Source of the DNA: Iphione sp. A-MEVVRFRX5
Taxonomy: Eukaryota
Direction: 5' to 3'
DNA length: 64,000 nucleotides
Assembly: GCA_976226885.1 (NCBI GenBank)
Contig: OZ320316.1
Span: 77,252,001-77,316,000 of the forward strand
Both the position numbers and the translations under genes were made by a program. The notes beneath the pieces are model-generated. The model made no database searches and was not told the DNA's origin. It saw only the letters and a program-made list of their open reading frames with translations. The number at the start of each line of letters is the position of its first letter. Within the stretch, counting starts at the first letter, position 1. This document shows positions 571-63,567 of the stretch, one piece after another.

Positions 571-699
571 NNNNNNNNNNNNNNNNNNNNNNNNNNNNNN
601 NNNNNNNNNNNNNNNNNNNNNNNNNNNNNNNNNNNNNNNNNNNNNNNNNNNNNNNNNNNNNNNNNNNNNNNNNNNNNNNNNNNNNNNNNNNNNNNNNNN
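571..699. other. Assembly gap (129 N)
   Basis: Run of n from 571 to 699. Confidence 0.99.
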
Positions 700-2763
700 C
701 ACATCGAGCGGTAAAATTGACCCATCGGATATCACTGGTTTTGGTGTATTCCAGCAGAAAAATGGCAAAACTACGACATATCTTTTACACTCATTTTTAA
801 AAATCCCAAAGCTCTATGGCAACTGAGTAGTGTTCATTTATTCATAGAAAGCCGAAAAGTAACGCCTAAATATCTTATTTTGGGGGTCTGAATAGTGAAT
901 TTCATGTTAGTGTGATGTCGTAGTTTTGCTCATAGAGTAAAAAAGCGAAGGGTCAATTGTTGTAATAATTTTTGAACAACGCGCCCACCTCGTAAAGGTC
1001 CATCCGTCTATTAAAGTTTAGATCCATTATGCAAAGTACAACGGGCGAATCACATGTAGTTACGTTTCGCCCTGCCGACATGTGCATACAGAAAGGGAAG
1101 CGCACATCACTGGAAATGGTGCTTGTAGACGGTGCGGCGCAATTGCCACTCACCTCCCCCCCACCCCAATGCAGCTACAACAACGAGCAAAAGTATGTAC
1201 TCACGGCCACCGGCGGTAGATGGTGCTGGCAGCGGCGGCGGCGGCGCAGGACGAATGGGGGGGCCCCGAACGGCGACGGCGAGCGCACTTGCCGTCGCTT
1301 GCTCGGAGGCTCTGCAAAGAAAAATAAATAACATGCATAATAAACATAGTACCCAATTTTACCATGCCATACGAGTGCCACTTTCAAACTTCATTTAGGC
1401 CCGGTGATTGCCACCTACATCCCATTGAGCGATAGCCTTGCGTGCAGTGCAGTGATAAGAGTGGCGTGATTGCTCACATGCTTCGCATGGAGACGCGGGG
1501 ATTCCCCCCCGTTGCCGGTGTCCCAAACTCGCACCTCTACCCGCCAGCAACGGCGCTAATAGCAATAAGGAAGAATACACCACCCCACATTTCGCCACAA
1601 ACCAATTTTATTGCTACACTGATTGTTTAGGCAAACCAATTATGCAGGCATCCAAAAGAGTGCCAATGTGCGGCCCCGCATGTCGTGCGACCGACTGCAG
1701 CAACCGGGGCAGGCGCGAGTGACGCTATCGGCCGCCATCTTTTTTCCACGATAAGCACCGGCACATAGCACACGCAGCAATTATCAGACTTGATGGTCAC
1801 ATGTACAATGTTGTATTTGCTCTAAATTCCATGGCAGTTCTAAAGAAGTTACTATAAGATTTTCAGTTACAAGCCCTATTATATAAAAGCCCTATACTTC
1901 CCATAGCCGAGTGAAGCTGTAAAAGAAGTCAAGGCAACTTACCCCCCGCTCCAGGCGTCTCGGCTGCTCTTTTCTGTGCAAACTGCATAAACGAAAGAAA
2001 ATTGAAGCCAGAGTTAGCTTTCGGTGGATAAACGGCTGAAACATTGTAAGCGTGTGTAAAGTTTTGCTGTTTGAGTTTCTTGGTTATAAATGAGAACATA
2101 CAGCTTAATTTGAAATGTGCAACGAGCATCTCAAGTTGGATAAGATGATACAGGTGTCTGCACCTCGTGGGAGAATGCAGGGGTAACCACGGCGAATGAT
2201 AGGGATGTGAGACAAACACTTACACGTCCTCGCCCCGTCATGATCAGGTTGATTGTGAGGGAGGCTGGGCCGAGGTGCCACTTCGAGGCTTCCGTTGCGC
2301 TCGGGAAGAAAGTTTCAGTTTCCTTTTGTTGGCATCTCTTTTCATATACAAGGCTAGATTTGGGCATTCACGGACAAATTGGACCGTTGCTGGCGGGCAT
2401 TAGAATTTTTCGGCGATGTTTGCTTCCAAAGTTGCCACAGGCTGCAAGTGGGGTTGGCCAGGTAATGAGACGCTGGTGGTCCAAGACGCTGCTGGTCCCT
2501 GACGCTACCGCTACCCATATAGCTGCTCGCACTCGCAACTCCTGCATTACAACTTTTACTATGTAAAGTGGCTGAGTGTGACTGTGTGCATGTGTGACTG
2601 ATGTTGTCTGAGGCAAATTAAATATTACCCTGTATAGGATAGCGTTTGTGCAAAGTATAAGTGGGTTTATCTCTCCAACTCAACAGAAACCATGTCAATG
2701 TCTGAATTAACGTAATCTCTCATTTGTTAGTTGTCTAAAGAAAGGTGTTCTTCTGATTTGAAG

Positions 2764-5700
2764 CTTGGGCATGGAAATTGAAGTGGAACCGCTTACGGCA
2801 AGAGTTTCGGCGACAGTACACAAAGCGCCAAGCGGCGGCGCGAAGCGGGGCTAGCGCTGAGGACTTGAGGCACTATGAGAGGTGGCCTTTCTGGCACCAA
2901 ATGCAGTTCCTCATCCCACATTTCCACCAGAGGGAAACGGAAACAAACTTTCCCTGCCGGCCTAGACAGCCAGCGGGTTGGGCAGGCAGTGCCGCACAAG
3001 ACCCAACAACGCGATCAAAGCCTTACTCGTACTCTTCCGGTCCCCCCCCCCACCAGACGGGAACGTCGAGCCGCCGAACGGGCAAAGAAGGCAGCGGCCG
3101 CTGACAACGCTACCAACCGACAGACAGGCACACAGCAAACTGACAGGAGACAGTTAGACACACAGTATACGTCTGGTAGCCCAATAGACACACAGCAAAC
3201 TGACGGGAGACAGTTAGACACACGGCATACGTTCGGTAGCCAGATAGACACACAGCAAACGGACAGGAGACAGTTAGACACACGGCATACGTTCGGTAGC
3301 CAGATAGACACACAGCAAACGGACAGGAGACAGTTAGACACACGGCATACGTTCGGTAGCCATATAGACACACAGCAAACTGAGAGGAGACAGTTAGACA
3401 CATGGCATACGTTCGGTAGCCAGATAGACACACAGCAAACTGACAGGAGACAGTTAGACGCTCAGCATACGTTCGGTAGCCAATTAGACACACAGCAGAC
3501 GGACCGGAGACAGTTAGACACACAGCATACCTTCGGTAGCCAGTTAGACACACAGCAAACGGACAGCAGACAGTTAGACCCACAGCATACAAGACAGACA
3601 GATGTGAGACATAACATCACGACTGCTGACGGTCATTGGCAGGACCTTCGTTTGCCACATTATGGCAGCAACCAACCTTCTGAGTCTGTTCGGCAGCGCA
3701 TTCACACAGCAATGTCTTGCGGATGTGGAGGATGGGTGGATACCCTGCCCCCGCCACCTGCTGCCGCAGGCGCAGCACCGGGACAAGCTCATGGCCTTTG
3801 GAGGACACCAGCCCCTCCTGCCGCATGCCGTGCTGGCCTGGCCCGTCCAACCCCCATCCGCCCCCTTTCCACCGCCCTTCCGCCCCTTGACCGTCCCCCA
3901 CACCTAGGACGCACGCCCACTGGCCCCCTGCCCTGGCCTCCAGAAGAACGACCACCTCTCGAAGCACTCGCGGACCGCCCAGCTCGTCAGCCTCTCCGAC
4001 ATGGTCCTGCTCGCGAGTCTCGGCCAGGCAGTGAAACACGCGAGCCTCTGTCTAACCGGGAACCTCTCGAACCTCTCCCTGACCGTCTGGCGCGTTCTGC
4101 CCCCCGCGCCGGCCCTGCCAACGATTCTGTGCCAGCCACTGAAGGTCGCGAGCCTCTGCCTGCCCGAGCAGATCTTGAGCCTCTCACAGACCGTCCGCCT
4201 CGTTCGGTTCCGCGAGACGGTCCTGCTCGCGAGCCTCTACCGGCCCGGGGAGCTTGTGAGCCTCTGCGTGATCCACCTGCTCGCGAGCGTCGACCAGCCA
4301 CACGTGCAGCCTGGACCCCGCCACCACCAGCTGCAACCCCACCGCCTCCGGTGCCACAGGAGGCACCCAAAGCCCCACCAGCGATCAACCCGTGAGTACC
4401 ACTGCCTATGTTAGGCTGGTCATTGTTGTTGTTGTTGTTGTTGTTGTTCACCTGCAGGTCGTCGTCGGCGACATCCTCATCGTTGAGGGGTCTATAATCC
4501 CTTCCTCTCGCCGCCCTCTCACGCTGCCATGGCACAGGTGCACTATACATCAGGTAGTCTGCCAACGCATCGCGCACTGCCGCCGCTGAGCGCAGGGGGC
4601 GGCGAGGGATGGGTCGCAAGTCCCTGAACGCACCCACACACTCCTCATTCGCTGCATAACGCCTGGCCATCTCCTCCTCGTGATCGTCGAGGAGGTCCGT
4701 TATTGCAGCGGGAGTGGTGTTGTTCTGCATGAGGTTGTGCAAGATGACGGTCGCCATTACCAGTCTCGGGACATAGTCGGCATGAATGGCCAGTTTGGTG
4801 TGGTAGACGCGCCAGCACGACACCAGTATACCAAACGAAGACTCAATCATCCGACGTGCCCGAGACAGGCGGTAGTTACACTCCTCATGCTTCCGGTGCA
4901 TCGACTTGTTCGGGTACGGCCGCAGCAGGTGCCGTTGAAGTGGGAATGCTGCATCAGCCACGAAGGCGTAGGGCATGGGTCCCATATCATCGGCACCAGG
5001 GAGTGGGCTATCCGCTGGGAGATTCAACTCGTCGGCGGCCAGGGCACGTGCAAACTCCGACTTGTTGAAAATCCCAGCGTTGTTGTCTCGGCCATAGCCC
5101 CCAATGTCCACGTAGATGAATTTATGATAGGCATCACACGCCGCCATGAGCACCTGGGAATGTTGTTGTTTGTAGTTGAAGAACATACTTCCCGAATTGG
5201 GTGGTGCGACGCAAACAATATGTTTTCCGTCCAGGGCGCCCAGGCAATTCGGGAAGTTCCAGCGGTACCTGCCAAAGTAAAAAGACTAATCGTTAAATTG
5301 ATGAGTAGTTGGAATAATCATTCAGTGTATGAGCGTGTGGGAAACTCGGTAAGCACGGGCTGTATTTAACCTACAAAGATACAAAAGAGGAACAGTGCCA
5401 AATATCACTATGTTACCTGAAGTTCGCCGCCATCAGTTTCCACTCCTCAGGGCTCGTTGGCAGGCGCACTTGCTCGTCTCTCATCGCGGAGCAAATGGCA
5501 CTCGCCACCTCTCGGATAATCCTGCTGACGGTTGTGATCCCAAGGCGGAAGTGATATCCGAGACTGGCGAATGACTCCCCCGTGGCACAGTACCTGCATC
5601 GTGAGAGCAGAGAGTGAAATTCCCCTCGGTCCCTGTTCAACTGGAAACCCCCCTTCAGCCACCTCCATATTAACATTACAGCACAAATCTTTACTTGCAC

Positions 5701-8028
5701 TATTGTCCCCGTGTAATTCTACAATCACCCTCACTGCAAGCCAGAACCATCCCAATAACCATCACATATATTATCGTACTTTTACAGGCTAGACACGACC
5801 CCACACCAGGACAGGACGCGGCGAGGACGACGACCTAACTGGTCATCGGAGAACATAGGCCTCCTTGGAGATTTCATCGAGCGTGGGATCGCCGCTGCGG
5901 AGGTACATATCAATCTATGTAATGCACGCACAAGAATCGGTTCTTCCAGAAAGCACTCTCCATTAATCTCAATCTTTCAGTGGGAGAGGATGACGTAAGG
6001 CCCAAATGTTATCACATACTCCCTCCGACACCTGCAACCAAAACCTACTTGCTCTATACTACCTTTAGAAACAACCGAAGTCGAGGTCTTGTGGGTGTAG
6101 AGTCTGGAACCCTTGCAAATCTTTAAAACCGGACCAAAACAAAGTCTGGTAGTACACAATGGGCAGTGGTAATGGTCAAAAACTTATCCAGCAAGAGAAA
6201 CACTGAAGGAATTACCACATCAAGACATTTCATTTGTTATCAATTCTACCAGATATTAATACGCACACACTTGACGGTAGGACCGGAGTGAATCAGTCGA
6301 TGATATCCCTAATTGGAGCAAACACAGGATCCAAAATAAGCACTGAGAAGATATGTACACCTCAGCAGACAATTGTAGACATAGATTAAGTTGAATATTA
6401 CCTATTTTGAAGCTCCTGGGCGAAGCCGTAAGGCAGAGGAACGAGGCGCCACATGTGGCTGAGGCCTACGCCTTCTGTCAATCGCTGGTCCTGCCGCTGT
6501 CACGCGTACCTCAGCATCTCTTGCTCCCGGTACAAACGGACCTGCTGGGAGTGATACACGAGGCGCTGAACCAGGCGGAACAACCGCCACAGCGCGTGAT
6601 GCCGGACGTGGCAGGCCGACCACGAGAGGCGGCGGAGCCGCAGCCACATGGGGATGTCTCACCCACGCCCTGCCGGATGAAGAGCCACAACCAGGAGCCT
6701 CCCCAGAACACATGGGCATTGATGCCAACGAGGCACCCGCTTCGCAACATGCCCTGGACCCCGATCCTGAGCCACCTGCGGAGATTGTCCAACGACAACG
6801 GACTCATAGCATAAGTCCGGACAGTGCAGCGGACTGGAGCAGGAGCCGCACTCCCAGCCCCACCTTCCCCGGGCCCACCAACGTCCCAACACCCAACGAC
6901 GACCTATTCAGCTCAGACAACAACTTGGAGCACCCCACCCCCCCCGGCCCGCCCAGCTCCCAAGCAACAAACCCAAACCACACGACCCACCCAGCAGCAG
7001 AAAATGTTTCCCCAAACACTAGCATAATCGCTCCCCCCCACAGTGACACAGACAGCGACCGCTCCGGATCGCATTCTCCATCGCTAATATATTCCAACAA
7101 GACAAAGCAGGACACACCGCCCGCTTCACGCCTGCGTCACAGCACCCCCATACACTTTTGCCCTGATATCCCATCCCAACAAGAAACACAGGCGCCTACC
7201 TACGACGAAAATACAAAGTGCATTCCACAAACACTATCACAGTCACACCAACACGGCACCGAGGAAAACCCATCCTGCGTGTCGCCGACTCCCGGCATGA
7301 CGCCCCCATACAAGAGACCCAAAGTCGGCCACCACTCCGCCCATCACACTCCGCAGACACACTCGCAGGAACCACCAACTCGTCAGTCTGTCGAAAGAAT
7401 AAATTTCACACACATGCAAACACACCACACGCCGAATTCCACACCCACCTACTACCCTAGCCACTTAACCGGACAGCCCTTCAGCCAGCACACCATGCAG
7501 ACACACCAGCAGCAATAGATCAACAGTCACCCTATGCCACGCGGCAATTACACACACCTCCCGACACACGGAACGCCGACATCCACACCCACATACAGTG
7601 GAAATGCCGCCCAAACGTACAGCCAGCACACCCCGCAGACAAACCACCAAGCACAAAACAATAGCCACTGCCTGGAGCAAGGAAATTTCCCACACCTGCC
7701 ACCTTACCACACGCCAACATCCACAGAATCACACTATCGCCCAGACATTGTCGGCCAACCTGACACGCACTACTTCCCCCAGACACCACAATACTGCCCA
7801 CAGTACCCCGCTAGCCAGACAAGGGAGCAAGCACAAATGCACCAGCAGGCATCCCACACGCGGGCATCTACACATGGCACCGATTCAGATCATGATTCAG
7901 ACATGTTTGTGACCCTGGACGAGTGGGTGGAATCTATCCACAGACAGGGCCTCGTGTGGTCACAGCCTGCAGTCCGGTCCTCGGAGGCTCAAAGCCAAAA
8001 CACCAGACATTACACCACACTAGAATAA
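2764..8028 (+). pseudogene. Harbinger partner gene: MADF (C-terminal half) + repeat linker + BESS-like motif + His/Pro/Thr-rich tail; disrupted copy, exon 1 not found
   Basis: Exons 2764-4391 (KWNRLRQEFRR..WPFWHQMQFLIPH; donor cc|gtgagt, phase 2), 5788-5902 (tttacag|g..gag|gtacat) and 6413-8028 (EAYAFCQSLVLPLSRVPQ..GVIHE). Splice phases close. Lesions: +1 shift near the C10 run 3042-3051, a frame shift near 6660, and TAG at 7516-7518. AATAAA at 8186. Confidence 0.75.
3127..3590 (+). repeat. 60-bp coding tandem repeat (~8 units, two 30-bp sub-units) encoding DTQQTDRRQLDTRHTFGSQI
   Basis: Units recur at 60-nt spacing, visible on consecutive sequence lines 3181-3541. Confidence 0.95.
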
Positions 8029-8663
8029 CACACACCACTACACCAACAAACACAACCATGAGGCCAGCCTCCTCCCCTCCTCCCTCCCGGCTCTCCCACG
8101 TCCCGCTGCGCCCTGCCCTGCTCCAGTCAAGCTGTATATCCCTGACTGTGGTTTTATACCTGAATGCGCATCGTAGTATGATAGCAATAAAGTCACAGAC
8201 GCATAAAAGCTGTACAGTTCTTCCTTTGTCTGTTTAATAACATAAACACAGACTATATTGCATGCATGGCCCGAAGCAGGAACGAGAGTCAAATGGGAAC
8301 CTACCTGAGAAAAACACACAGTCGCTGGGTCGGAGAAATAGCTGCCCTCGTCAGGGAGACTCTGGTGAGGTCCTCGCACACCTTGTCCAGCACATATCGG
8401 AACTGGGAAGGTGTCAGACGGAAGACCTTCGGGAACTCCTCAGCGTCATCCCAAATGTGTCTGACTAGGTTGTTGTACGCACCTTCCTTGAGCCGATACG
8501 TGAGTATTGGGCGTACCCAATACCTAGCCTCCCGACGGCGCCACTGGCGTCGTCTTCGATGAATTTCGTCGAAGGCGCCCAGTGCCCCCAGCATCGCCAG
8601 CATAACTGCTTCCATGCACAGACACATGGACATCATTTCCTTAATGTCATGCTCCATGTACAT
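3987..8663 (-). CDS. Harbinger (DDE_Tnp_4/HARBI1-like) transposase, 3 exons, ~605 aa
   Basis: Exons 8663-8305 (..YWVRPIL..FRLTPSQF..QRLCVFL/R, donor ag|gtaggt), 5593-5417 (YCATGESF..., donor ag|gtaac) and 5268-3987 (YRWNFPNCLGALDGKH..VADAAFPL..ARRMIESSFGIL). Total 1818 nt, in frame. Catalytic D (DGKH), D (DAAF) and E (IESSFG) present. Confidence 0.92.
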
Positions 8664-9204
8664 CCTGACGCTGTGGGAATAAAAGCAATGCCAATCTTAC
8701 GCACACTATTTCAATTCAGGTATGAAAACAGTATAACACGAATTTGGGACAGAAAGGTGTTTGCTCGTTCTATGATTGCCGAATTACCTGGTTGAGTATA
8801 TGGCTTATAACAGCTTCTTACGACAAATGGGCGGTTTCCCAAAGATAACTTACCTGGTCTGTAGTGGAACACGTGTGTTTCTGGCAGGCAAACACGGACA
8901 GACGTCTCCGTCAAAGTTGAAGAGGTAGCGGAATGCGCCAGGGGCTGAGTTGCTCCCCTTTTTAAAGGGCACGGCGCGTCACTGCTTGCGTCGGGCCTTG
9001 GCGTGGGGCCACCACGGGAGGTTGTACGATGAGATTGGAGACCTCTTTGTTGGCAGATGCGACGATAAAAATTGGGCAATAAAAGCGAGCCGCCGCCGAA
9101 ACGATTTACAGTCACAAAATAATTACTGGTGGACGAGGGACGCAGGTGTGCCGCCACAGTTCAAGGCGAATGTCAAACCTCAACGAGAGACGCAAAGAAT
9201 CGGT

Positions 9205-9645
9205 GCCGGTCTAGTGGTGGCGCCCGCCGCCAAAGCAAGTCGGTATCAGCCTGTCAGAGTGCCAATTAGAGTCGTACTCAATAAGAACCCTTGAAACAAA
9301 GGAGGTGTTCAATGTTGTAGATAAGGCCAGTGGTCAGCACGGCGGCATGTACCGCCAAAGTTACGCCGGGGGGCAGTAGCTCAGAACGACGGCCTGTTAA
9401 ATCGATGGCCTATCTGGACGCCATTTCGCAGGTCAGTGAAGGTGCAGTGATGGCGACCGCCGACAAAGCAAGTCGGTATCAGCCTGAGAAAGTTCCCATT
9501 AAAGTAGTACGCAATAAGAACCCTGGCGACAAAGTAGGTGTTGAAGGTTGCAGATAAGGCGAGTGGTCGGCCAAAGTTACGCCAGGGGACAAGAGCACAG
9601 CCCGACGGCCTGTTCTCACGATGGCCTATCTAGACGCCATTTCAT
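9205..9645. repeat. Diverged tandem duplication, ~235-bp unit x2
   Basis: caaagcaagtcggtatcagcctg..aataagaaccct..gataaggc..gccaaagttacgcc..cgacggcctgtt..gatggcctatct(g/a)gacgccatttc occurs twice. Confidence 0.85.
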
Positions 9646-10444
9646 CAAACATGCTGGTTCAATTCGGCACCGAGTAGTCCCCACAACACCATGTGCGCTT
9701 CGTCGGAGATAGTCAAACAATCACACCATGGTGAAAGGCGTTCATGATTTACTGGCAGCTGGTACTGTGGTGACCGGAGATGTGTGGGAAAACTAGCGGA
9801 CATGGTATGAGGGGACCTGTTCTTTATGGCCGACAGGGTACAAATCGATGTAAAAGACACGAAAGAATTACCTTCAAAGGCAAAGCTTCTGTCACTAAAG
9901 ACAAATGGGAAAGGCTATTGAGCTGCCAAGGCTCATTAGTTTGGTGCAAAAATGGTCCTCCACCCGATACTCCTACCGTTCAGGTCAATAGCCAAAGAAT
10001 GAAAATGTGGTCCTTCAGAAAACGATTCCTGTGGTATCCTCTGTAAACCGCCCCAAAATCCAGCCATATACGAAACCAGCCCCTCCCAAAAGAAAAGCAG
10101 TGACGTATGGAGGACGGGAGGAGCGGGCTGGCGCTATTAAAAAACTATTACACGCCACAAACTCGGACACAACAGGACGCGCGCCCTTCAACAGCCTATT
10201 AATTAGATATCCCGGGAGGCACATCATTGCCAACCACGTAAGAAATGCCTAGAGAGCGGTAAAAATTATCTCGAGATAACACCACGGCTGGCGGCAGGGT
10301 CTCCGTCATGGCGAGGGGGTCTACTCCTCCGGTGCACATGTCCTAGGCCCACCGTTGGTAATGTACTCATCTGGTACACGTGTCCTAGGCCCGCCGTCGG
10401 AACTATACCATTGAGCGACGGCAGACGTAACGTCCTGACATTAT

Positions 10445-10680
10445 GGAAACTCTAGCGAGCGTCGCTCGAGAATCGACAGATACCCGGTTCGATTCCCAAG
10501 CGGGGTGAACGAGTTTGTAGTAGTGTCAGTGACTTTTGAGATATGGCACGGAGTTACCCCCTCCCCCTGTCAACGTGGCGCCCAAAGAGATGCGTGTTTT
10601 GTTTGCATCTTACGCTGATGCGTCCATCACCTCGGACAGTTCACATGGACACATCCTATTGATAATCAGTAATTAATAAT
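10445..10680 (+). mobile_element. Possible tRNA-derived SINE
   Basis: Pol III B-box-like GGTTCGATTCC at 10486-10496, a weak A-box-like TAGCGAGCG upstream, and an AT-rich 3' end. Confidence 0.35.
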
Positions 10681-11464
10681 GAATTGGGAGAGAGAACACA
10701 TCCTCTAATTGTTGTTAAAGTAGTTGAGATTTGCTAGATTAAATCGCAGGGTACCTACCTTAAACACCATTTAAGGGCCCCAAGACGTAGTGAAGGCTTT
10801 AAGAGGAGACCACGTGGCATGGCGGGTAAGGCCGTAGTGTGAATATAATAATCAGTGCGAATTATATCATACTCCGACCTTTTCTCCTTATCTTTCGCGT
10901 CCAAAAGTTTTGTTATGCCGTCTGTTTGCCCCTCCATAGAACTGTCTTTCTGCCTTTCAGTCGCTCCAACAAAGATTAGCGAGGCGAAGTACAAGCGTAC
11001 CCATGAGAAGATGCACTGAATTTAAGGCGAGGTGAAGCAGAGGGCGCATGACATACTTCCTGTCATAACGTTGCCAATAGATGGCGCAACGGACGATAGA
11101 AATAACCTTGAGCGTCCAGTGTCTCTCCCTCACATGGTGCGTCACTACTTGTAGCTCAGTCATACATCTAATTCAAAAGCCAGCCTTTTCCGGCTGCAAA
11201 TTAATAGAAACTTACAGAAAATGAACTGATTGCCAGAGTAAATCCATATAAATTATCTACCGCGCCGATTGGAAAAACAAATGACGGAATCCTGTCAGAA
11301 TGTAAATAGAAGGACGTTGGGTGATATCACTGTTTTCTATGACCATTCAAAACAAAAATGAACATGTTCATATGTAGAAGGATATCAAACTACAAAGAAA
11401 TTAACGGCGACAGGGAGCATAGGCCAGCATGTGCATACACAACCATCCCCAAATGCGTAGGCGT

Positions 11465-11545
11465 CCTCCGTGGCTCAGAGCGCAGGGCGCTCCGCCCGAC
11501 TCGTCTCGTGGGTCGCGGCACGGGTTCGCATCCCGGGCCCGGCCT
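11465..11545 (+). other. tRNA-like A/B-box remnant (SINE head or tRNA pseudogene)
   Basis: TGGCTCAGAGCG at 11471 and GGTTCGCATCC at 11523. No acceptor stem could be folded. Confidence 0.3.
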
Positions 11546-12769
11546 ACGGGGGAGGAAATAGGCTAGAACCATTGATACATGGACAAATGATACATGGACA
11601 AATTAAATACATGGACTGACAGGGGCTGTTAAGCCCCCAATGGCACACCAGGGCACACCAGGGTGTAGTCACGGAGGGCGATGCTTGTTTTGTCTGAATT
11701 TATGGTCTATTAAATTCCTGGTATACTATTTGAGGGCAAACCGGGGAATGTTGGGAGATCCTTCATTTCCATCCATCAGGGAATACATCTCTCACCACAG
11801 AGAGTGGGGAGGGGTTCATTTTGGGTGATTTTTGGCAAAAATGTGGTCGCGTCCTGACTAGGGCCCACCACCCTATATTAGGAACAAGTCAATACCGATT
11901 TCTGCTTCTTTTTCTGCCCACGGCACACCCGTTCTCTTCTGACATCGCTCTGAACCCGCGACTCTCAGAGACAGACACAGAGGAAAGCGAGGGAGCTGCT
12001 CTAGTGGGTGGTGCACAAGTGCCGGGTCATTGGCACTGGGGGTGCAATAAAACGTGGGGGAGGCTATGCTGGATAGCCAAATTACCTCTGTCAAGCGAGC
12101 GGCTTTATGCCTTGCTGTGTGCATGGAAAAGGGGCCTTAGTTATGTTTGCAATCATTTAAAAAAGTTTTACCCTAACAATTCTCATTTTAGCATTAAGGG
12201 GGAGTCCCCTGGCCTAACCAACCACCCCTCCACCCTAACTGCCACCAGGACATGTCTCCTCCTGTGCTACAGTCACCGATTTTTGCGTTACGGTTTCAGA
12301 TTTTTGCACTAGTGTGAAACACTCTGTTCTCTCCTGCCTTGGCTGGGGCTCCCCTCCAAGAGGGTGATGATCAGGTCCTAAGTATGTACCCATCCATTCT
12401 CACCTTCCTTAATTGAGTGTGTGGGGGATCTCCCCTACCATATTAATGTAAAGGAAAAAAGATATATTTCTGGAGGCTATGCTAAAGATGCATTTAATTT
12501 ATGAAAAAATGGCAAAAACTTCCAGAGGAAGACTTAATGAAAAGTGACAAATGTAATGGGAGTTTTGGCTAAAGATGCACTGAATTTATTAAAAAGCGGC
12601 AAATATTTCCAGAGGTCATGCTGAAGATGAAATAATTCCTAATAATATGGCAAGGAAAAAACAAGGGATGTGGGAAGTCTCCCTCCACATTAATATATTC
12701 ATGAAAGTGTATTTTAATGAAAGGTCTAGCCATATGTACTTTAACCCTGCAATGATTGAAAGCATCATG

Positions 12770-61643: not shown

Positions 61644-63567
61644 TGCGGCGTGGATCGAATCCCAAAAAGAGATGTGTTCGGAATCCAATGGTCCAGCGGT
61701 ATGAGAAAATTAGGTTCGCACGCCTTTTTAAAGGAACCTTTAGTTCCGGTCGATTAAAAAATGCGCTCGTAAACATTGCCACGCGCTGGCTGGAAATGGG
61801 TCGAATGTCGTCACGTGACGCGAGTTGACATATTTTCGCACAGTCGTATTCAGTGCAGCGTGGCGGGCCGGTCGAACACACCGGACAAGTATGGGAGTCG
61901 GTTTCAGACATCGGGCTAACGGGTCACGGTCGAATGCAAACAGACAACATGGGGAATGTTAAAAGAGATACAGCTGTTCGAAGTTTCAACAGGTCCGTGT
62001 TCGTATACATGGGAAATGCGCCTTAGCGGCGGTAACTTGTGGTGGGATGGTTGTGTTCTTGGGTAAGGGGAGCGGGTGTCCTGCTGATGTTGGGGGTAGG
62101 GGCGGTCGTGTTTTCTGTGTTCGCCATGTACCAAACCCTCGGCTACACCATGTTTTTTTTGTATGGAAGGGGTTAAGTGGTAGACAAACCGGCCTGTTCG
62201 CTTCTCCGTGCGTAGAACATACTCCTGAGTCCGGCACGGTTAGGTACTCGTCTATATGCTGACTGGTCAGCAGGAAACGACTGCCGTCCACGTCCTGACG
62301 CTTGACCCACTTCCAAGAAACTAACTCGCCGGGATGTACATTAAGCTGAAAATAATCACTGGTAGGTCAATACCCTTGCATCGGTGCCAATGCCTAGAAC
62401 CCTCATTGAGCTGGCACGTTCGGAAAAGAATACATATCATGTATAATTAAGTTCGATTTTGGATGGATCATTACTAAATAGAGAGGAGAATGGAGGCCTG
62501 TTAACTAGCCCTCTAAATGTTGGGGTTCTCTGTCTCGGTTCTGGTCCATCTCAGCACTTAGCAATATATGTTGCTTGAAACGGGTTCGTTGATATTGTCA
62601 TTTTGGCTCCATATACTTCATATTACAATTTCAAGTTGAAAAGTGTTTATTGAGCATCCACCTCGTCTACATTAGATGGTTTCAGTTGGGTACTAAGCCT
62701 AACCCTTCACTTTACAACTTGGCCGATAACCTGTACATATATTTTCTAGTCGCTATTTTACTAATGTTAATTCTTAATTTAAGAAGCTACTTCACGAGAC
62801 AGGTCTCCGATCGTCTGATGCCGCCACACTACACGCGACTTTTTAAAGCACATTTTACTATCTACTTATTCCGAGAGACTTTTCCACGTGGTAGATCATT
62901 CGACCATCTAATGCCGCCGTATATAAAGCTGTTTTTGTATAGATTAACCAGAGGACGATCCATCTGCAGCTGTGGATCATCCCCAGTTCTTGTCATGCTT
63001 ACTCTCCTTCTGTTGAAGACGGAATAGACATGTCATTTACCAGTAGCATCAGGAGATACTCCAATCTCTAGTCAATGTCTAATATCTTTTCCCTTCTAAT
63101 ATCTTTTCTAATATTTAATATCTTTTCGATTGTAAACAAGCCGTTTATATGGTTGTCCGTACTGTCAGAATACAACCACTTATTGACTGATACCACTTCC
63201 TTACTAGTCTTACCATATCCCCACGTCTAGGACATAAAAGCATAGGCAACCCGTAATTAACATGGCGAATTACGAAAGCAAGTTGTATCCTAGTAATTTT
63301 GTAGGCTTTTCAGGCTTTAGTACTCTTTCCCACTATTAGATAACCGTTTGCCCATCTAGCCCCTACCAGTGTCATATAAAAGCAACACCCTAGAATATGT
63401 CAAGTAGGCTCGATGCGATACCATATATGCGAAAATATTGCTTCCTCCAGAATAGCGAGTTTTGTACAAATGCTAGAAAGTGATCTTCACTCTAAGGCTT
63501 TTAGCGCAGTCGCCATCCCTCTGTCGAACCTGGAACCATGTTAAGCTGCACTGAAGAAACCCCTGCA

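What the first reader, a model, noticed from the sequence alone, without database searches (positions are those of the whole stretch)
2764..8663. Element 1: transposase and MADF-BESS genes are reciprocally interleaved on opposite strands
Seen: the apparent stop of ORF 2875-4395 is part of a perfect donor (cc|gtgagt, phase 2). It splices in frame to 5788-5902 and then to 6413 onward, jumping over transposase exons 3 and 2. MADF exons 3-4 lie inside transposase intron 1 (8304-5594). Each gene therefore has exons within an intron of the other. Established: Harbingers need both a DDE transposase and a Myb/SANT/MADF partner. Inference: the layout forces convergent overlapping transcription and makes it hard to delete one gene without the other. 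Novelty relative to published Harbinger structures was not checked.
Basis: partly seen in the sequence, partly recalled or inferred. Interest (0 to 1): 0.82.

Follow-up and report, generated by a model that had tools for sequence, protein, structure and literature searches.

The report
Interlocked two-gene Harbinger transposon, decayed copy
This is a worn copy of a Harbinger-type jumping gene whose enzyme gene and helper gene lie on opposite strands with coding pieces inside each other's introns, a layout that recurs in related elements of other animals but which I could not find described in the papers I could search.

Summary
On the minus strand a DDE_Tnp_4 transposase is split into exons 8663-8305, 5593-5417 and 5268 onward. 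On the plus strand an ORF ends in a cc|GTGAGTACC donor at 4391/4392 and joins in frame to 5788-5902 and 6413-6814. These two exons lie in transposase intron 1, and transposase exons 2-3 lie in the helper intron 4392-5787.

The layout is not chance. A second, distantly related element in this window (51740-62022) has the same order, the same 9-base donor and the same intron phase. Intact or near-intact elements fetched from other assemblies (L004, L006, L007, L002 and Haliotis asinina L001) are also interlocked, whereas L003 and L005 are plain tail-to-tail.

This copy is defective:
- The MADF N-half is missing.
- The MADF C-half is in a different frame from the long ORF; the shift probably lies at a 10-C run.
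- The transposase lacks the stop seen in element 2.
- Pfam does not call the BESS motif, which is only BESS-like.

No RNA run was listed, so splicing is inferred. This scan had already noted the layout elsewhere in this genome. Verdict: a real, conserved variant of PIF/Harbinger organisation.

The parts
8305..8663 (-). Transposase exon 1 (ATG at 8663; ends ...LCVFL + AG, phase 2, donor AG|gtaggt)
   Evidence: 45% identical over 73 aa to element 2 at 53011-53229. Also matches L002, L004 and L005 exon 1. Splice context.
5594..8304 (-). Transposase intron 1 (2711 nt); holds helper exons 3 and 4 on the opposite strand
   Evidence: GT at 8304-8303 and AG at 5595-5594. The junction restores FLR|YCATGESF, as in element 2 and the fetched loci.
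5417..5593 (-). Transposase exon 2 (HTH_Tnp_4-like)
   Evidence: Pfam HTH_Tnp_4 at E 0.018, below cut-off. 60% identical over 58 aa to element 2.
5269..5416 (-). Transposase intron 2 (148 nt); absent in element 2, where exons 2 and 3 are fused
   Evidence: TTCAG|gtaaca ... tttggcag|GTACCG. The joined sequence has the same length as the uninterrupted element 2 sequence.
3987..5268 (-). Transposase exon 3. The DDE_Tnp_4 core is conserved down to about 4500. The frame then runs on without a stop to 3987-3989, antisense to helper exon 2.
   Evidence: Pfam DDE_Tnp_4 at 2.7e-25, covering the full profile. 58% identical over 255 aa to element 2. Element 2 has TGA where element 1 reads AGT.
2416..2461 (+). 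Remnant of the 3' end of helper exon 1 (…ASKVATGCKWGWP, donor CAG|gtaatg, phase 1). The MADF N-half upstream is missing or degenerate, with an in-frame TAG at 2401-2403.
   Evidence: 6 of 10 residues match the end of element 2's MADF exon 1 (…ASMAADGCVWP), a weak match (E 0.56). The intron position and phase are the same as in element 2, L004 and Haliotis.
2764..4391 (+). Helper exon 2. MADF C-half at 2766-2912 in frame 0 (stop 3102-3104). C10 run at 3042-3051. 60-nt (20-aa) tandem repeats at 3061-3650. Pro-rich tail in frame 1 up to the donor.
   Evidence: Pfam MADF positions 48-84, E 0.0011. 39% identical over 59 aa to element 2's MADF C-half. Between 2764 and 4400, frame 1 has only two early stops (2779, 2866) besides the donor TGA at 4393, against 23 and 21 stops in the other frames; it is open from 2869. 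Repeats.
4392..5787 (+). Helper intron that spans transposase exons 3 and 2 (phase 2; donor GTGAGTACC, acceptor ttttacag)
   Evidence: There are homologous phase-2 introns in element 2 (56905 to 55785) and in L004 (11060 to 9793).
5788..5902 (+). Helper exon 3 (38 codons + 1 nt; a basic RRGRR patch followed by a helix-like stretch)
   Evidence: Needed to keep the frame between 4391 and 6413. Its last residues AAAE align across the junction with element 2's single exon. On its own it is not significantly similar to anything.
6413..6814 (+). Helper exon 4, with a BESS-like motif at about 6461-6571 (EAYAFCQSLVLPLSRVPQH…IHEAL); stop at 6812-6814
   Evidence: tblastn to element 2 at 55615-55484, E 0.005. 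z 6.6 against shuffles. z 4.1 (1 of 1000 shuffles) against the Pfam-confirmed BESS of L003. hhalign P 6.5e-4. No Pfam hit.
6463..8026 (+). Frame-1 stretch of about 520 codons with a single stop (7516). Possibly a decayed continuation of the last helper exon.
   Evidence: One stop inside the stretch (7516), against 8-18 stops in the other frames over 6413-8300. Strong C/A strand skew. No similarity to element 2's tail beyond composition: 148 of 500 shuffles score as high.
12117..12139 (-). Harbinger-type terminal repeat GGCCCCTTTTCCATGCACAC followed by TTA. Candidate right end of element 1.
   Evidence: Resembles the ends of element 2 (GGCGCATTTCCCATG…) and of the Haliotis element. No matching left end in the window.

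Best explanation
Window 2416-8663, perhaps extending to 12136, is a partly decayed copy of a PIF/Harbinger DNA transposon from a lineage whose two genes are convergent and interlocked. The DDE transposase gene (minus strand) has a long first intron that carries the 3' exons of the helper gene (a basic patch and a BESS-like motif) on the plus strand. The helper gene (MADF-type DNA-binding protein) has a phase-2 intron that carries transposase exons 2 and 3. In working relatives, each pre-mRNA must be transcribed through the other gene's exons in antisense and then spliced. The transposase would cut and paste the element, and the MADF helper would bind its ends and bring the transposase to the nucleus. 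That division of labour is established for Harbinger3_DR and Ping/Pong as summarised in PMC9710019; here it is an inference. In this copy the helper gene is broken: the MADF N-half is lost, there is a frame change at or near a 10-C run, and there may be further lesions after 6814. The transposase frame has lost its usual stop. The copy shows the architecture but probably cannot supply a helper protein. Shown: the anatomy, frame continuity, conservation of order, donor and intron phase, and intact homologous gene models elsewhere. Inferred: actual splicing, co-transcription, and any regulatory consequence of the antisense overlap.
For: Transposase: Pfam DDE_Tnp_4 at 2.7e-25. The three exons join in frame with consensus sites. 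They are 45-60% identical to element 2, exon by exon. Helper: the in-frame splice chain 4391>5788 and 5902>6413 holds. The donor 9-mer GTGAGTACC is shared with element 2 at the homologous spot and occurs only 3 times in 64 kb. The spanning intron is phase 2 in element 1, element 2 and L004. Exon 3+4 aligns to element 2's single last exon across the proposed junction, z 6.6. Frame 1 has no stop from 2869 to the donor, while the other frames have more than 20. The layout is conserved. Element 2 is complete, with TIRs and a TTA duplication. L004 gives an intact 365-aa helper ORF across the transposase exon. L006 and L007 have the same order at about 80% transposase identity. L002 has a BESS-like ORF in transposase intron 1. 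In Haliotis L001 the Pfam MADF halves (1.2e-9 and 1.4e-10) flank the transposase exon, and a Pfam BESS (8e-10) sits in transposase intron 1 of a 3.05-kb element with TIRs and a TAA duplication. The record's own annotation also places a MADF gene across the transposase exon of the second Haliotis copy.
Against: No RNA run was listed, so no junction is observed. In this copy the MADF C-half (frame 0) and the donor-compatible frame (frame 1) differ. The MADF N-half is not found. Pfam finds no BESS in element 1 or element 2. Exon 3 alone has no significant relative. The left end of the element was not found. Element 2 also needs a frame change in the same exon, which could mean a feature I have not understood rather than two independent defects.
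Confidence: 0.82

Rival explanations
1. The exons inside transposase intron 1 (5788-5902, 6413-6814) belong to a separate third transcription unit with its own start. It would make a MADF-less BESS-like protein, and the MADF gene would end near 3104 or 4395.
For: The MADF frame stops at 3102-3104 in element 1, and both elements need a frame change to connect MADF to the downstream exons. Earlier notes report extra genes in other Harbingers of this genome. No RNA data.
Against: In L004 the MADF, acidic and BESS-like exons assemble into one uninterrupted 365-aa ORF across the transposase exon. In Haliotis the MADF domain itself is split by that intron. MADF and BESS lie next to each other on one strand, downstream of the transposase, in the non-interleaved relatives L003 and L005. 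The donor and intron phase are conserved between elements 1 and 2. Exon 5788-5902 has no start codon in frame.
Confidence: 0.1
2. Chance: GC-rich, repeat-rich DNA gives long open frames on both strands and splice-like motifs, and only the transposase is a real gene.
For: The region is 53-56% G+C with tandem repeats. Both strands are open in 3987-4391. Pfam is silent on the long ORF and on exons 3-4.
Against: Protein-level conservation of the intronic exon between elements whose DNA is otherwise unalignable. Similarity to a Pfam-confirmed BESS, 1 of 1000 shuffles. The shared donor 9-mer. The same exon order in seven independent loci.
Confidence: 0.03
3. Composite: one element or gene fragment inserted into another in opposite orientation, so the interleaving is an accident of nested insertion at this locus.
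For: This genome is crowded with Harbingers. The left end of element 1 is missing and the candidate right end is 3.5 kb from the transposase start.
Against: Element 2 has the same internal order inside a single pair of TIRs with a TTA duplication. The 3.05-kb Haliotis element does too, in two 99.4% identical copies. No internal TIR-like sequences were found in element 1.
Confidence: 0.03

Closest known systems
Canonical two-gene PIF/Harbinger elements (zebrafish Harbinger3_DR, rice Ping/Pong, insect PIF with a MADF partner; PMC9710019, PMC9179366)
   Same: DDE_Tnp_4 transposase plus a Myb/SANT/MADF DNA-binding partner. TTA/TAA target duplication and short TIRs (seen for element 2 and Haliotis). 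Both proteins are presumed necessary for transposition.
   Different: In the canonical form the two genes are separate units. The relatives L003 (Merluccius polli) and L005 show the plain tail-to-tail arrangement with no shared introns. Here each gene has exons inside an intron of the other.
L004/L006/L007 elements (unnamed ENA assemblies) and element 2 of this window
   Same: Same order: transposase exon 1, helper last exon, transposase DDE exon(s), helper MADF exons. Same phase-2 spanning intron and same phase-1 intron inside the MADF domain.
   Different: L004 is intact. Element 1 has lost the MADF N-half, has frame breaks, carries an extra transposase intron (5416-5269), and has an extra helper intron (5903-6412) that splits what is a single exon in element 2.
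Haliotis asinina 3.05-kb Harbinger (L001)
   Same: Interlocked antisense transposase and MADF-BESS genes within one TIR pair.
   Different: There the transposase DDE exon sits in the phase-1 intron that splits the MADF domain, so the MADF C-half and BESS both lie in transposase intron 1. In element 1 both MADF halves lie outside, and a later intron hosts the transposase exons. Its BESS passes Pfam; element 1's does not.
MADF-BESS transcription regulators of insects (Adf-1, Dip3 type; Pfam PF10545 + PF02944)
   Same: N-terminal MADF and C-terminal BESS-type motif order. The motif pattern F-x-x-S/G-L-x-P-x-L-x-R-V/L-P is present.
   Different: Those are host genes. Here the gene is transposon-borne, the motif is below the Pfam threshold, and the MADF domain is incomplete in this copy.
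Convergent gene pairs in other DNA transposons (maize MuDR mudrA/mudrB) and interleaved host gene pairs in Drosophila (from my own knowledge, not checked here)
   Same: Opposite-strand genes within one unit. 'Interleaved' is a recognised class of overlapping gene arrangement.
   Different: As far as I recall, MuDR's genes are convergent but not interlocked. I found no paper describing reciprocal exon-in-intron interleaving inside a transposon.

Membership tests
PIF/Harbinger superfamily | DDE_Tnp_4-type transposase with the catalytic D, D, E motifs | tested here: met
   Pfam PF13359 at 2.7e-25 over the full profile. GALDGKH, FVADAAFP and RRMIESSFG are readable in the ORF. Best database relatives are HARBI1/ALP1-like proteins.
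PIF/Harbinger superfamily | Second gene encoding a Myb/SANT/MADF DNA-binding protein | tested here: inconclusive
   Only the C-terminal half is present: Pfam MADF positions 48-84, 19.7 bits against a 22-bit cut-off. It is homologous to element 2's MADF C-half, which passes at 25.5 bits. The N-half was not found.
PIF/Harbinger superfamily | Terminal inverted repeats and a 3-bp TTA/TAA target duplication | tested here: inconclusive
   A candidate right end at 12117-12136 is followed by TTA. No left partner lies in the window; an assembly gap at 571-709 and the window edge lie upstream. Element 2 meets this feature fully.
MADF-BESS proteins | Complete N-terminal MADF domain | tested here: not met
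   Profile positions 1-47 have no counterpart in this copy. There is an in-frame TAG at 2401-2403 just upstream of the exon 1 remnant.
MADF-BESS proteins | C-terminal BESS motif (PF02944) | tested here: inconclusive
   No Pfam hit even at E 10. Profile-profile P 6.5e-4 against three BESS-bearing relatives. z 4.1, 1 of 1000 shuffles, against the Pfam-confirmed BESS of L003.
Interlocked Harbinger layout (L004 / Haliotis type) | Helper 3' exon(s) inside transposase intron 1 on the opposite strand | tested here: met
   5788-5902 and 6413-6814 lie within 5594-8304. The homologous exon is in the same place in element 2, L002, L004, L006, L007 and L001.
Interlocked Harbinger layout (L004 / Haliotis type) | Transposase DDE exon(s) inside a helper intron, removed by splicing | not testable with these tools
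   The sequence model is coherent: conserved donor, phase 2, in-frame chain. No RNA run was listed, so read laying could not be used.

The most novel reading that the evidence does not exclude
The interlocked antisense layout is a selected self-regulation device, not just a packing accident. Each pre-mRNA is antisense to the other's exons, so expressing both genes would create long double-stranded RNA. That RNA would couple the two genes' output and feed small-RNA silencing, giving the element a built-in brake. The layout may also have arisen more than once, because the transposase exon block sits in different helper introns in the abalone element and in the element 1/L004 type.
Probability: 0.15. 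Interest if true: 0.8.

Novelty: new variant of a known kind. Interest (0 to 1): 0.55.

Why it matters
PIF/Harbinger elements are the main DNA transposons that need two proteins, and reviews treat the two genes as separate units. A conserved arrangement in which the two genes are interlocked on opposite strands has several consequences:
- Gene finders will mis-annotate these elements. For example, the 642-aa Merluccius model (P0001) fuses exons of two neighbouring copies.
- Internal deletions can hardly remove one gene without damaging the other.
- Transcription of one gene necessarily produces antisense RNA to the other, which makes a link between transposon gene layout and RNA-based silencing testable.

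This particular copy adds little beyond a further, damaged example. The value lies in the family-wide pattern.

Tried and rejected
- **RNA evidence:** The look-up of sequencing runs listed no RNA run for 2700-8699.
- **Exon 4 word search:** no relative found for the exon 4 peptide.
- **DNA comparison of the two elements:** blastn aligns only the DDE exon, at 65%, so only protein-level comparison was possible.
- **Helper tails:** I tested whether the tail of element 1 (6712-8025) is homologous to element 2's tail. The similarity is no better than composition, with 148 of 500 shuffles scoring as high.
- **Exon 3 alone against element 2:** not significant.
- **MADF N-half in 1-2800:** only weak matches. 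One is a minus-strand match at 2384-2295 (E 0.084 in a 3-kb search) that I treat as chance or a scrambled fragment.
- **Left terminal repeat:** none found.
- **Small frame-restoring intron:** I considered one between 2900 and 3104. No usable donor can be read there.
- **Transposase tree:** it does not resolve whether interlocked elements form one clade.
- **Literature:** six full-text searches and four papers read found no description of the layout. Kapitonov & Jurka 2004, Casola 2007 and Sinzelle 2008 were not held, and Repbase was not available, so prior description cannot be excluded.
- **P0007 (Nucella):** could not be located on a contig.
Full report
**What is there**

I read 2400-9200 and listed the ORFs.

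The minus strand carries a PIF/Harbinger transposase in three pieces:
- 8663-8305: the N-terminal region.
- 5593-5417: HTH_Tnp_4-like, Pfam E 0.018.
- 5268 onward: Pfam DDE_Tnp_4 at 2.7e-25 over the whole profile.

The plus strand carries the C-terminal half of a MADF domain at 2766-2912 (Pfam positions 48-84, 19.7 bits, just under the cut-off). It also carries a 506-codon ORF (2875-4395) whose stop is part of cc|GTGAGTACC. Joining 4391 to 5788, and 5902 to 6413, keeps the frame open to a stop at 6812-6814. The geometry is as stated:
- Helper exons 5788-5902 and 6413-6814 lie in transposase intron 1 (8304-5594).
- Transposase exons 2 and 3 lie in helper intron 4392-5787.

**Is it more than chance?**

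No RNA run could be listed for this stretch, so I used comparison.

The window holds a second Harbinger in the opposite orientation. It is complete, with terminal repeats GGCGCATTTCCCATG… and a TTA duplication at 51740-62022. Its DNA aligns to element 1 only in the DDE exon, at 65%. At protein level the corresponding pieces match in the same order:

| Piece | Identity to element 1 | Note |
|---|---|---|
| Transposase exon 1 | 45% | |
| Transposase exon 2 | 60% | |
| Transposase exon 3 | 58% | |
| MADF C-half | 39% | E 2e-8 |
| Motif-bearing exon inside transposase intron 1 | 34% over 44 aa | E 0.005 |

A local alignment of element 1's exon 3+4 peptide with element 2's single last exon scores 88, against 41±7 for shuffles (0 of 2000 reach it). 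It runs across the proposed 5902>6413 junction.

The helper donor is the same 9-mer, GTGAGTACC, in both elements, and that 9-mer occurs only three times in the whole window on both strands. In element 2 it lies 9 nt beyond the transposase stop codon, in what is untranslated sequence for the transposase. Its conservation is therefore not explained by transposase coding. The spanning intron is phase 2 in both elements.

**Relatives elsewhere**

A protein search with the DDE exon found only relatives of 50% identity or less. I fetched several of their loci, with these results:

- **Haliotis asinina (L001):** a 3.05-kb element present twice at 99.4% identity, with terminal repeats and a TAA duplication. 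It has:
  - transposase exon 1 at 10001-10306;
  - a Pfam BESS (8e-10) at 10473-11006 on the other strand;
  - the MADF C-half (1.4e-10) at 11097-11291;
  - the transposase DDE exon at 11403-12311;
  - the MADF N-half (1.2e-9) at 12481-12669.

  One MADF domain is thus split by a phase-1 intron that contains the transposase exon. This cannot work without splicing across it. The record's own annotation places a MADF gene across the transposase exon of the second copy.
- **L004:** the helper exons 12357-12192, 11513-11354, 11216-11061 and 9792-9177 assemble into an intact 365-aa ORF (MADF, acidic stretch, basic patch, BESS-like motif). Its last intron is phase 2 and contains the transposase exon 9878-10804.
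- **L006 and L007:** the same order, at about 80% transposase identity to L004.
- **L002:** a BESS-like ORF in transposase intron 1.
- **L003 (Merluccius polli) and L005:** the plain tail-to-tail arrangement with no interleaving.

The interlocked layout is therefore a conserved feature of some Harbinger lineages, not an accident of this locus. The transposase tree groups element 1 with element 2 (99/98) and L002 (84/93). It does not resolve whether interleaving arose once. The transposase block sits in a different helper intron in Haliotis than in the element 1/L004 type, which hints at more than one origin or a later rearrangement.

**What is wrong with this copy**

1. The MADF C-half is in frame 0, which stops at 3102-3104. 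The donor-compatible frame 1 is open only from 2869. A one-base change is needed, and a run of ten C's at 3042-3051 lies in the interval.

   Element 2 needs a frame change in the same exon, where AP-rich reading passes from one frame to the other at a run of about seven C's near 57095. Either both are real indels in indel-prone repeats, or they are homopolymer errors of the assembly. I could not check reads.
2. Only the last ~15 codons of MADF exon 1 survive (2416-2461). The match to element 2's …ASMAADGCVWP is weak (6 of 10 residues, E 0.56), but the intron position and phase agree. Upstream there is an in-frame TAG and no N-half.
3. Where element 2's transposase ends in TGA, element 1 reads AGT. 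Its frame runs on for about 135 codons, antisense to helper exon 2, down to 3987.
4. After 6814, frame 1 stays open to 8026 with a single stop at 7516, while the other frames have 8-18 stops. The last exon may once have been much longer. I found no homology to confirm that.
5. The left end of the element is not in the window. A Harbinger-type end followed by TTA at 12117-12139 may be the right end.

**The 'BESS' label**

Pfam does not call BESS in element 1 or element 2. The motif EAYAFCQSLVLPLSRVPQH…IHEAL fits the BESS pattern. It aligns to the Pfam-confirmed BESS of L003 with z 4.1 (1 of 1000 shuffles) and to a three-sequence BESS profile with P 6.5e-4. I call it BESS-like.

**How it most likely works**

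In intact relatives the two genes are transcribed convergently from the two ends of the element. Each primary transcript runs through the other's exons in antisense, and splicing removes them.

By homology with studied Harbingers (as summarised in PMC9710019), the transposase cuts and pastes. The MADF protein binds subterminal sites and is needed for nuclear import of the transposase.

They were not tested. Double-stranded RNA and small-RNA feedback are speculation.

**Novelty**

Six full-text searches, and reading four Harbinger papers, found no mention of interleaved or nested genes in these elements. The classic descriptive papers and Repbase were not available, so I cannot exclude that the exon coordinates are already recorded there.

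This scan has already noted the same layout on element 2 of this window and on other pieces of this genome. I tested the abalone lead and the element 2 claim myself, and they hold.

**Verdict**

The copy itself is a defective member, and the splicing is inferred. It is a new variant of a known kind, of moderate interest.

Noticed in passing
window 51740-62022: Complete second Harbinger in the opposite orientation, with 15-nt perfect (about 31-nt imperfect) terminal repeats GGCGCATTTCCCATG… and a TTA duplication. Its helper exon 2 also needs a frame change, near a C run at about 57095, to reach the donor-compatible frame. Its transposase stop lies 9 nt from the complement of the helper donor.
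   Followed up: partly
window 57741-61467 (minus strand): Helper intron 1 of element 2 is 3.7 kb, against 302 nt in element 1. It contains open frames with coiled-coil-like and Gln/Pro-rich sequence around 59300-59800. Earlier notes on this genome describe 'third genes' in MADF introns of other Harbingers.
   Followed up: no
window 3987-4391: Both strands are open here. The plus strand is the Pro-rich helper frame. The minus strand is a Gly/Arg/Ser-rich run-on of the transposase frame, caused by the absence of the stop that element 2 has.
   Followed up: partly
window 4421-4447: A (GTT)9 microsatellite, read as nine Asn codons in the transposase tail, lies about 30 nt downstream of the helper donor.
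   Followed up: no
window 3061-3650: About ten 60-nt tandem units encode a 20-aa repeat (…QIDTQQTDRRQLDTRHTFGS…) in helper frame 1. Element 2 has 42-nt Ala/Pro units at the equivalent place (57044-57563). Both periods are multiples of three.
   Followed up: partly
window 9200-9643: Two pairs of direct repeats, about 139 nt and 74 nt, spaced 216-233 nt apart. They lie between the transposase start and the candidate right end.
   Followed up: no
window 571-709: A run of N (assembly gap or mask) about 1.7 kb upstream of the helper exon 1 remnant. The missing left end of element 1 could lie in or beyond it. I did not try to fill it.
   Followed up: no
L003 685-5904 (Merluccius polli, P0001): The annotated 642-aa 'ALP1-like' protein appears to fuse exons of two neighbouring transposase copies (748-2180 and 4942-6291). 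A MADF-BESS gene is annotated between them, so the apparent nesting there is a gene-model artefact.
   Followed up: partly
L001, L004, window elements 1 and 2: The phase-1 intron inside the MADF domain, three residues before the W-x-x-K/R-W motif, is at the same position in all four helper genes.
   Followed up: partly
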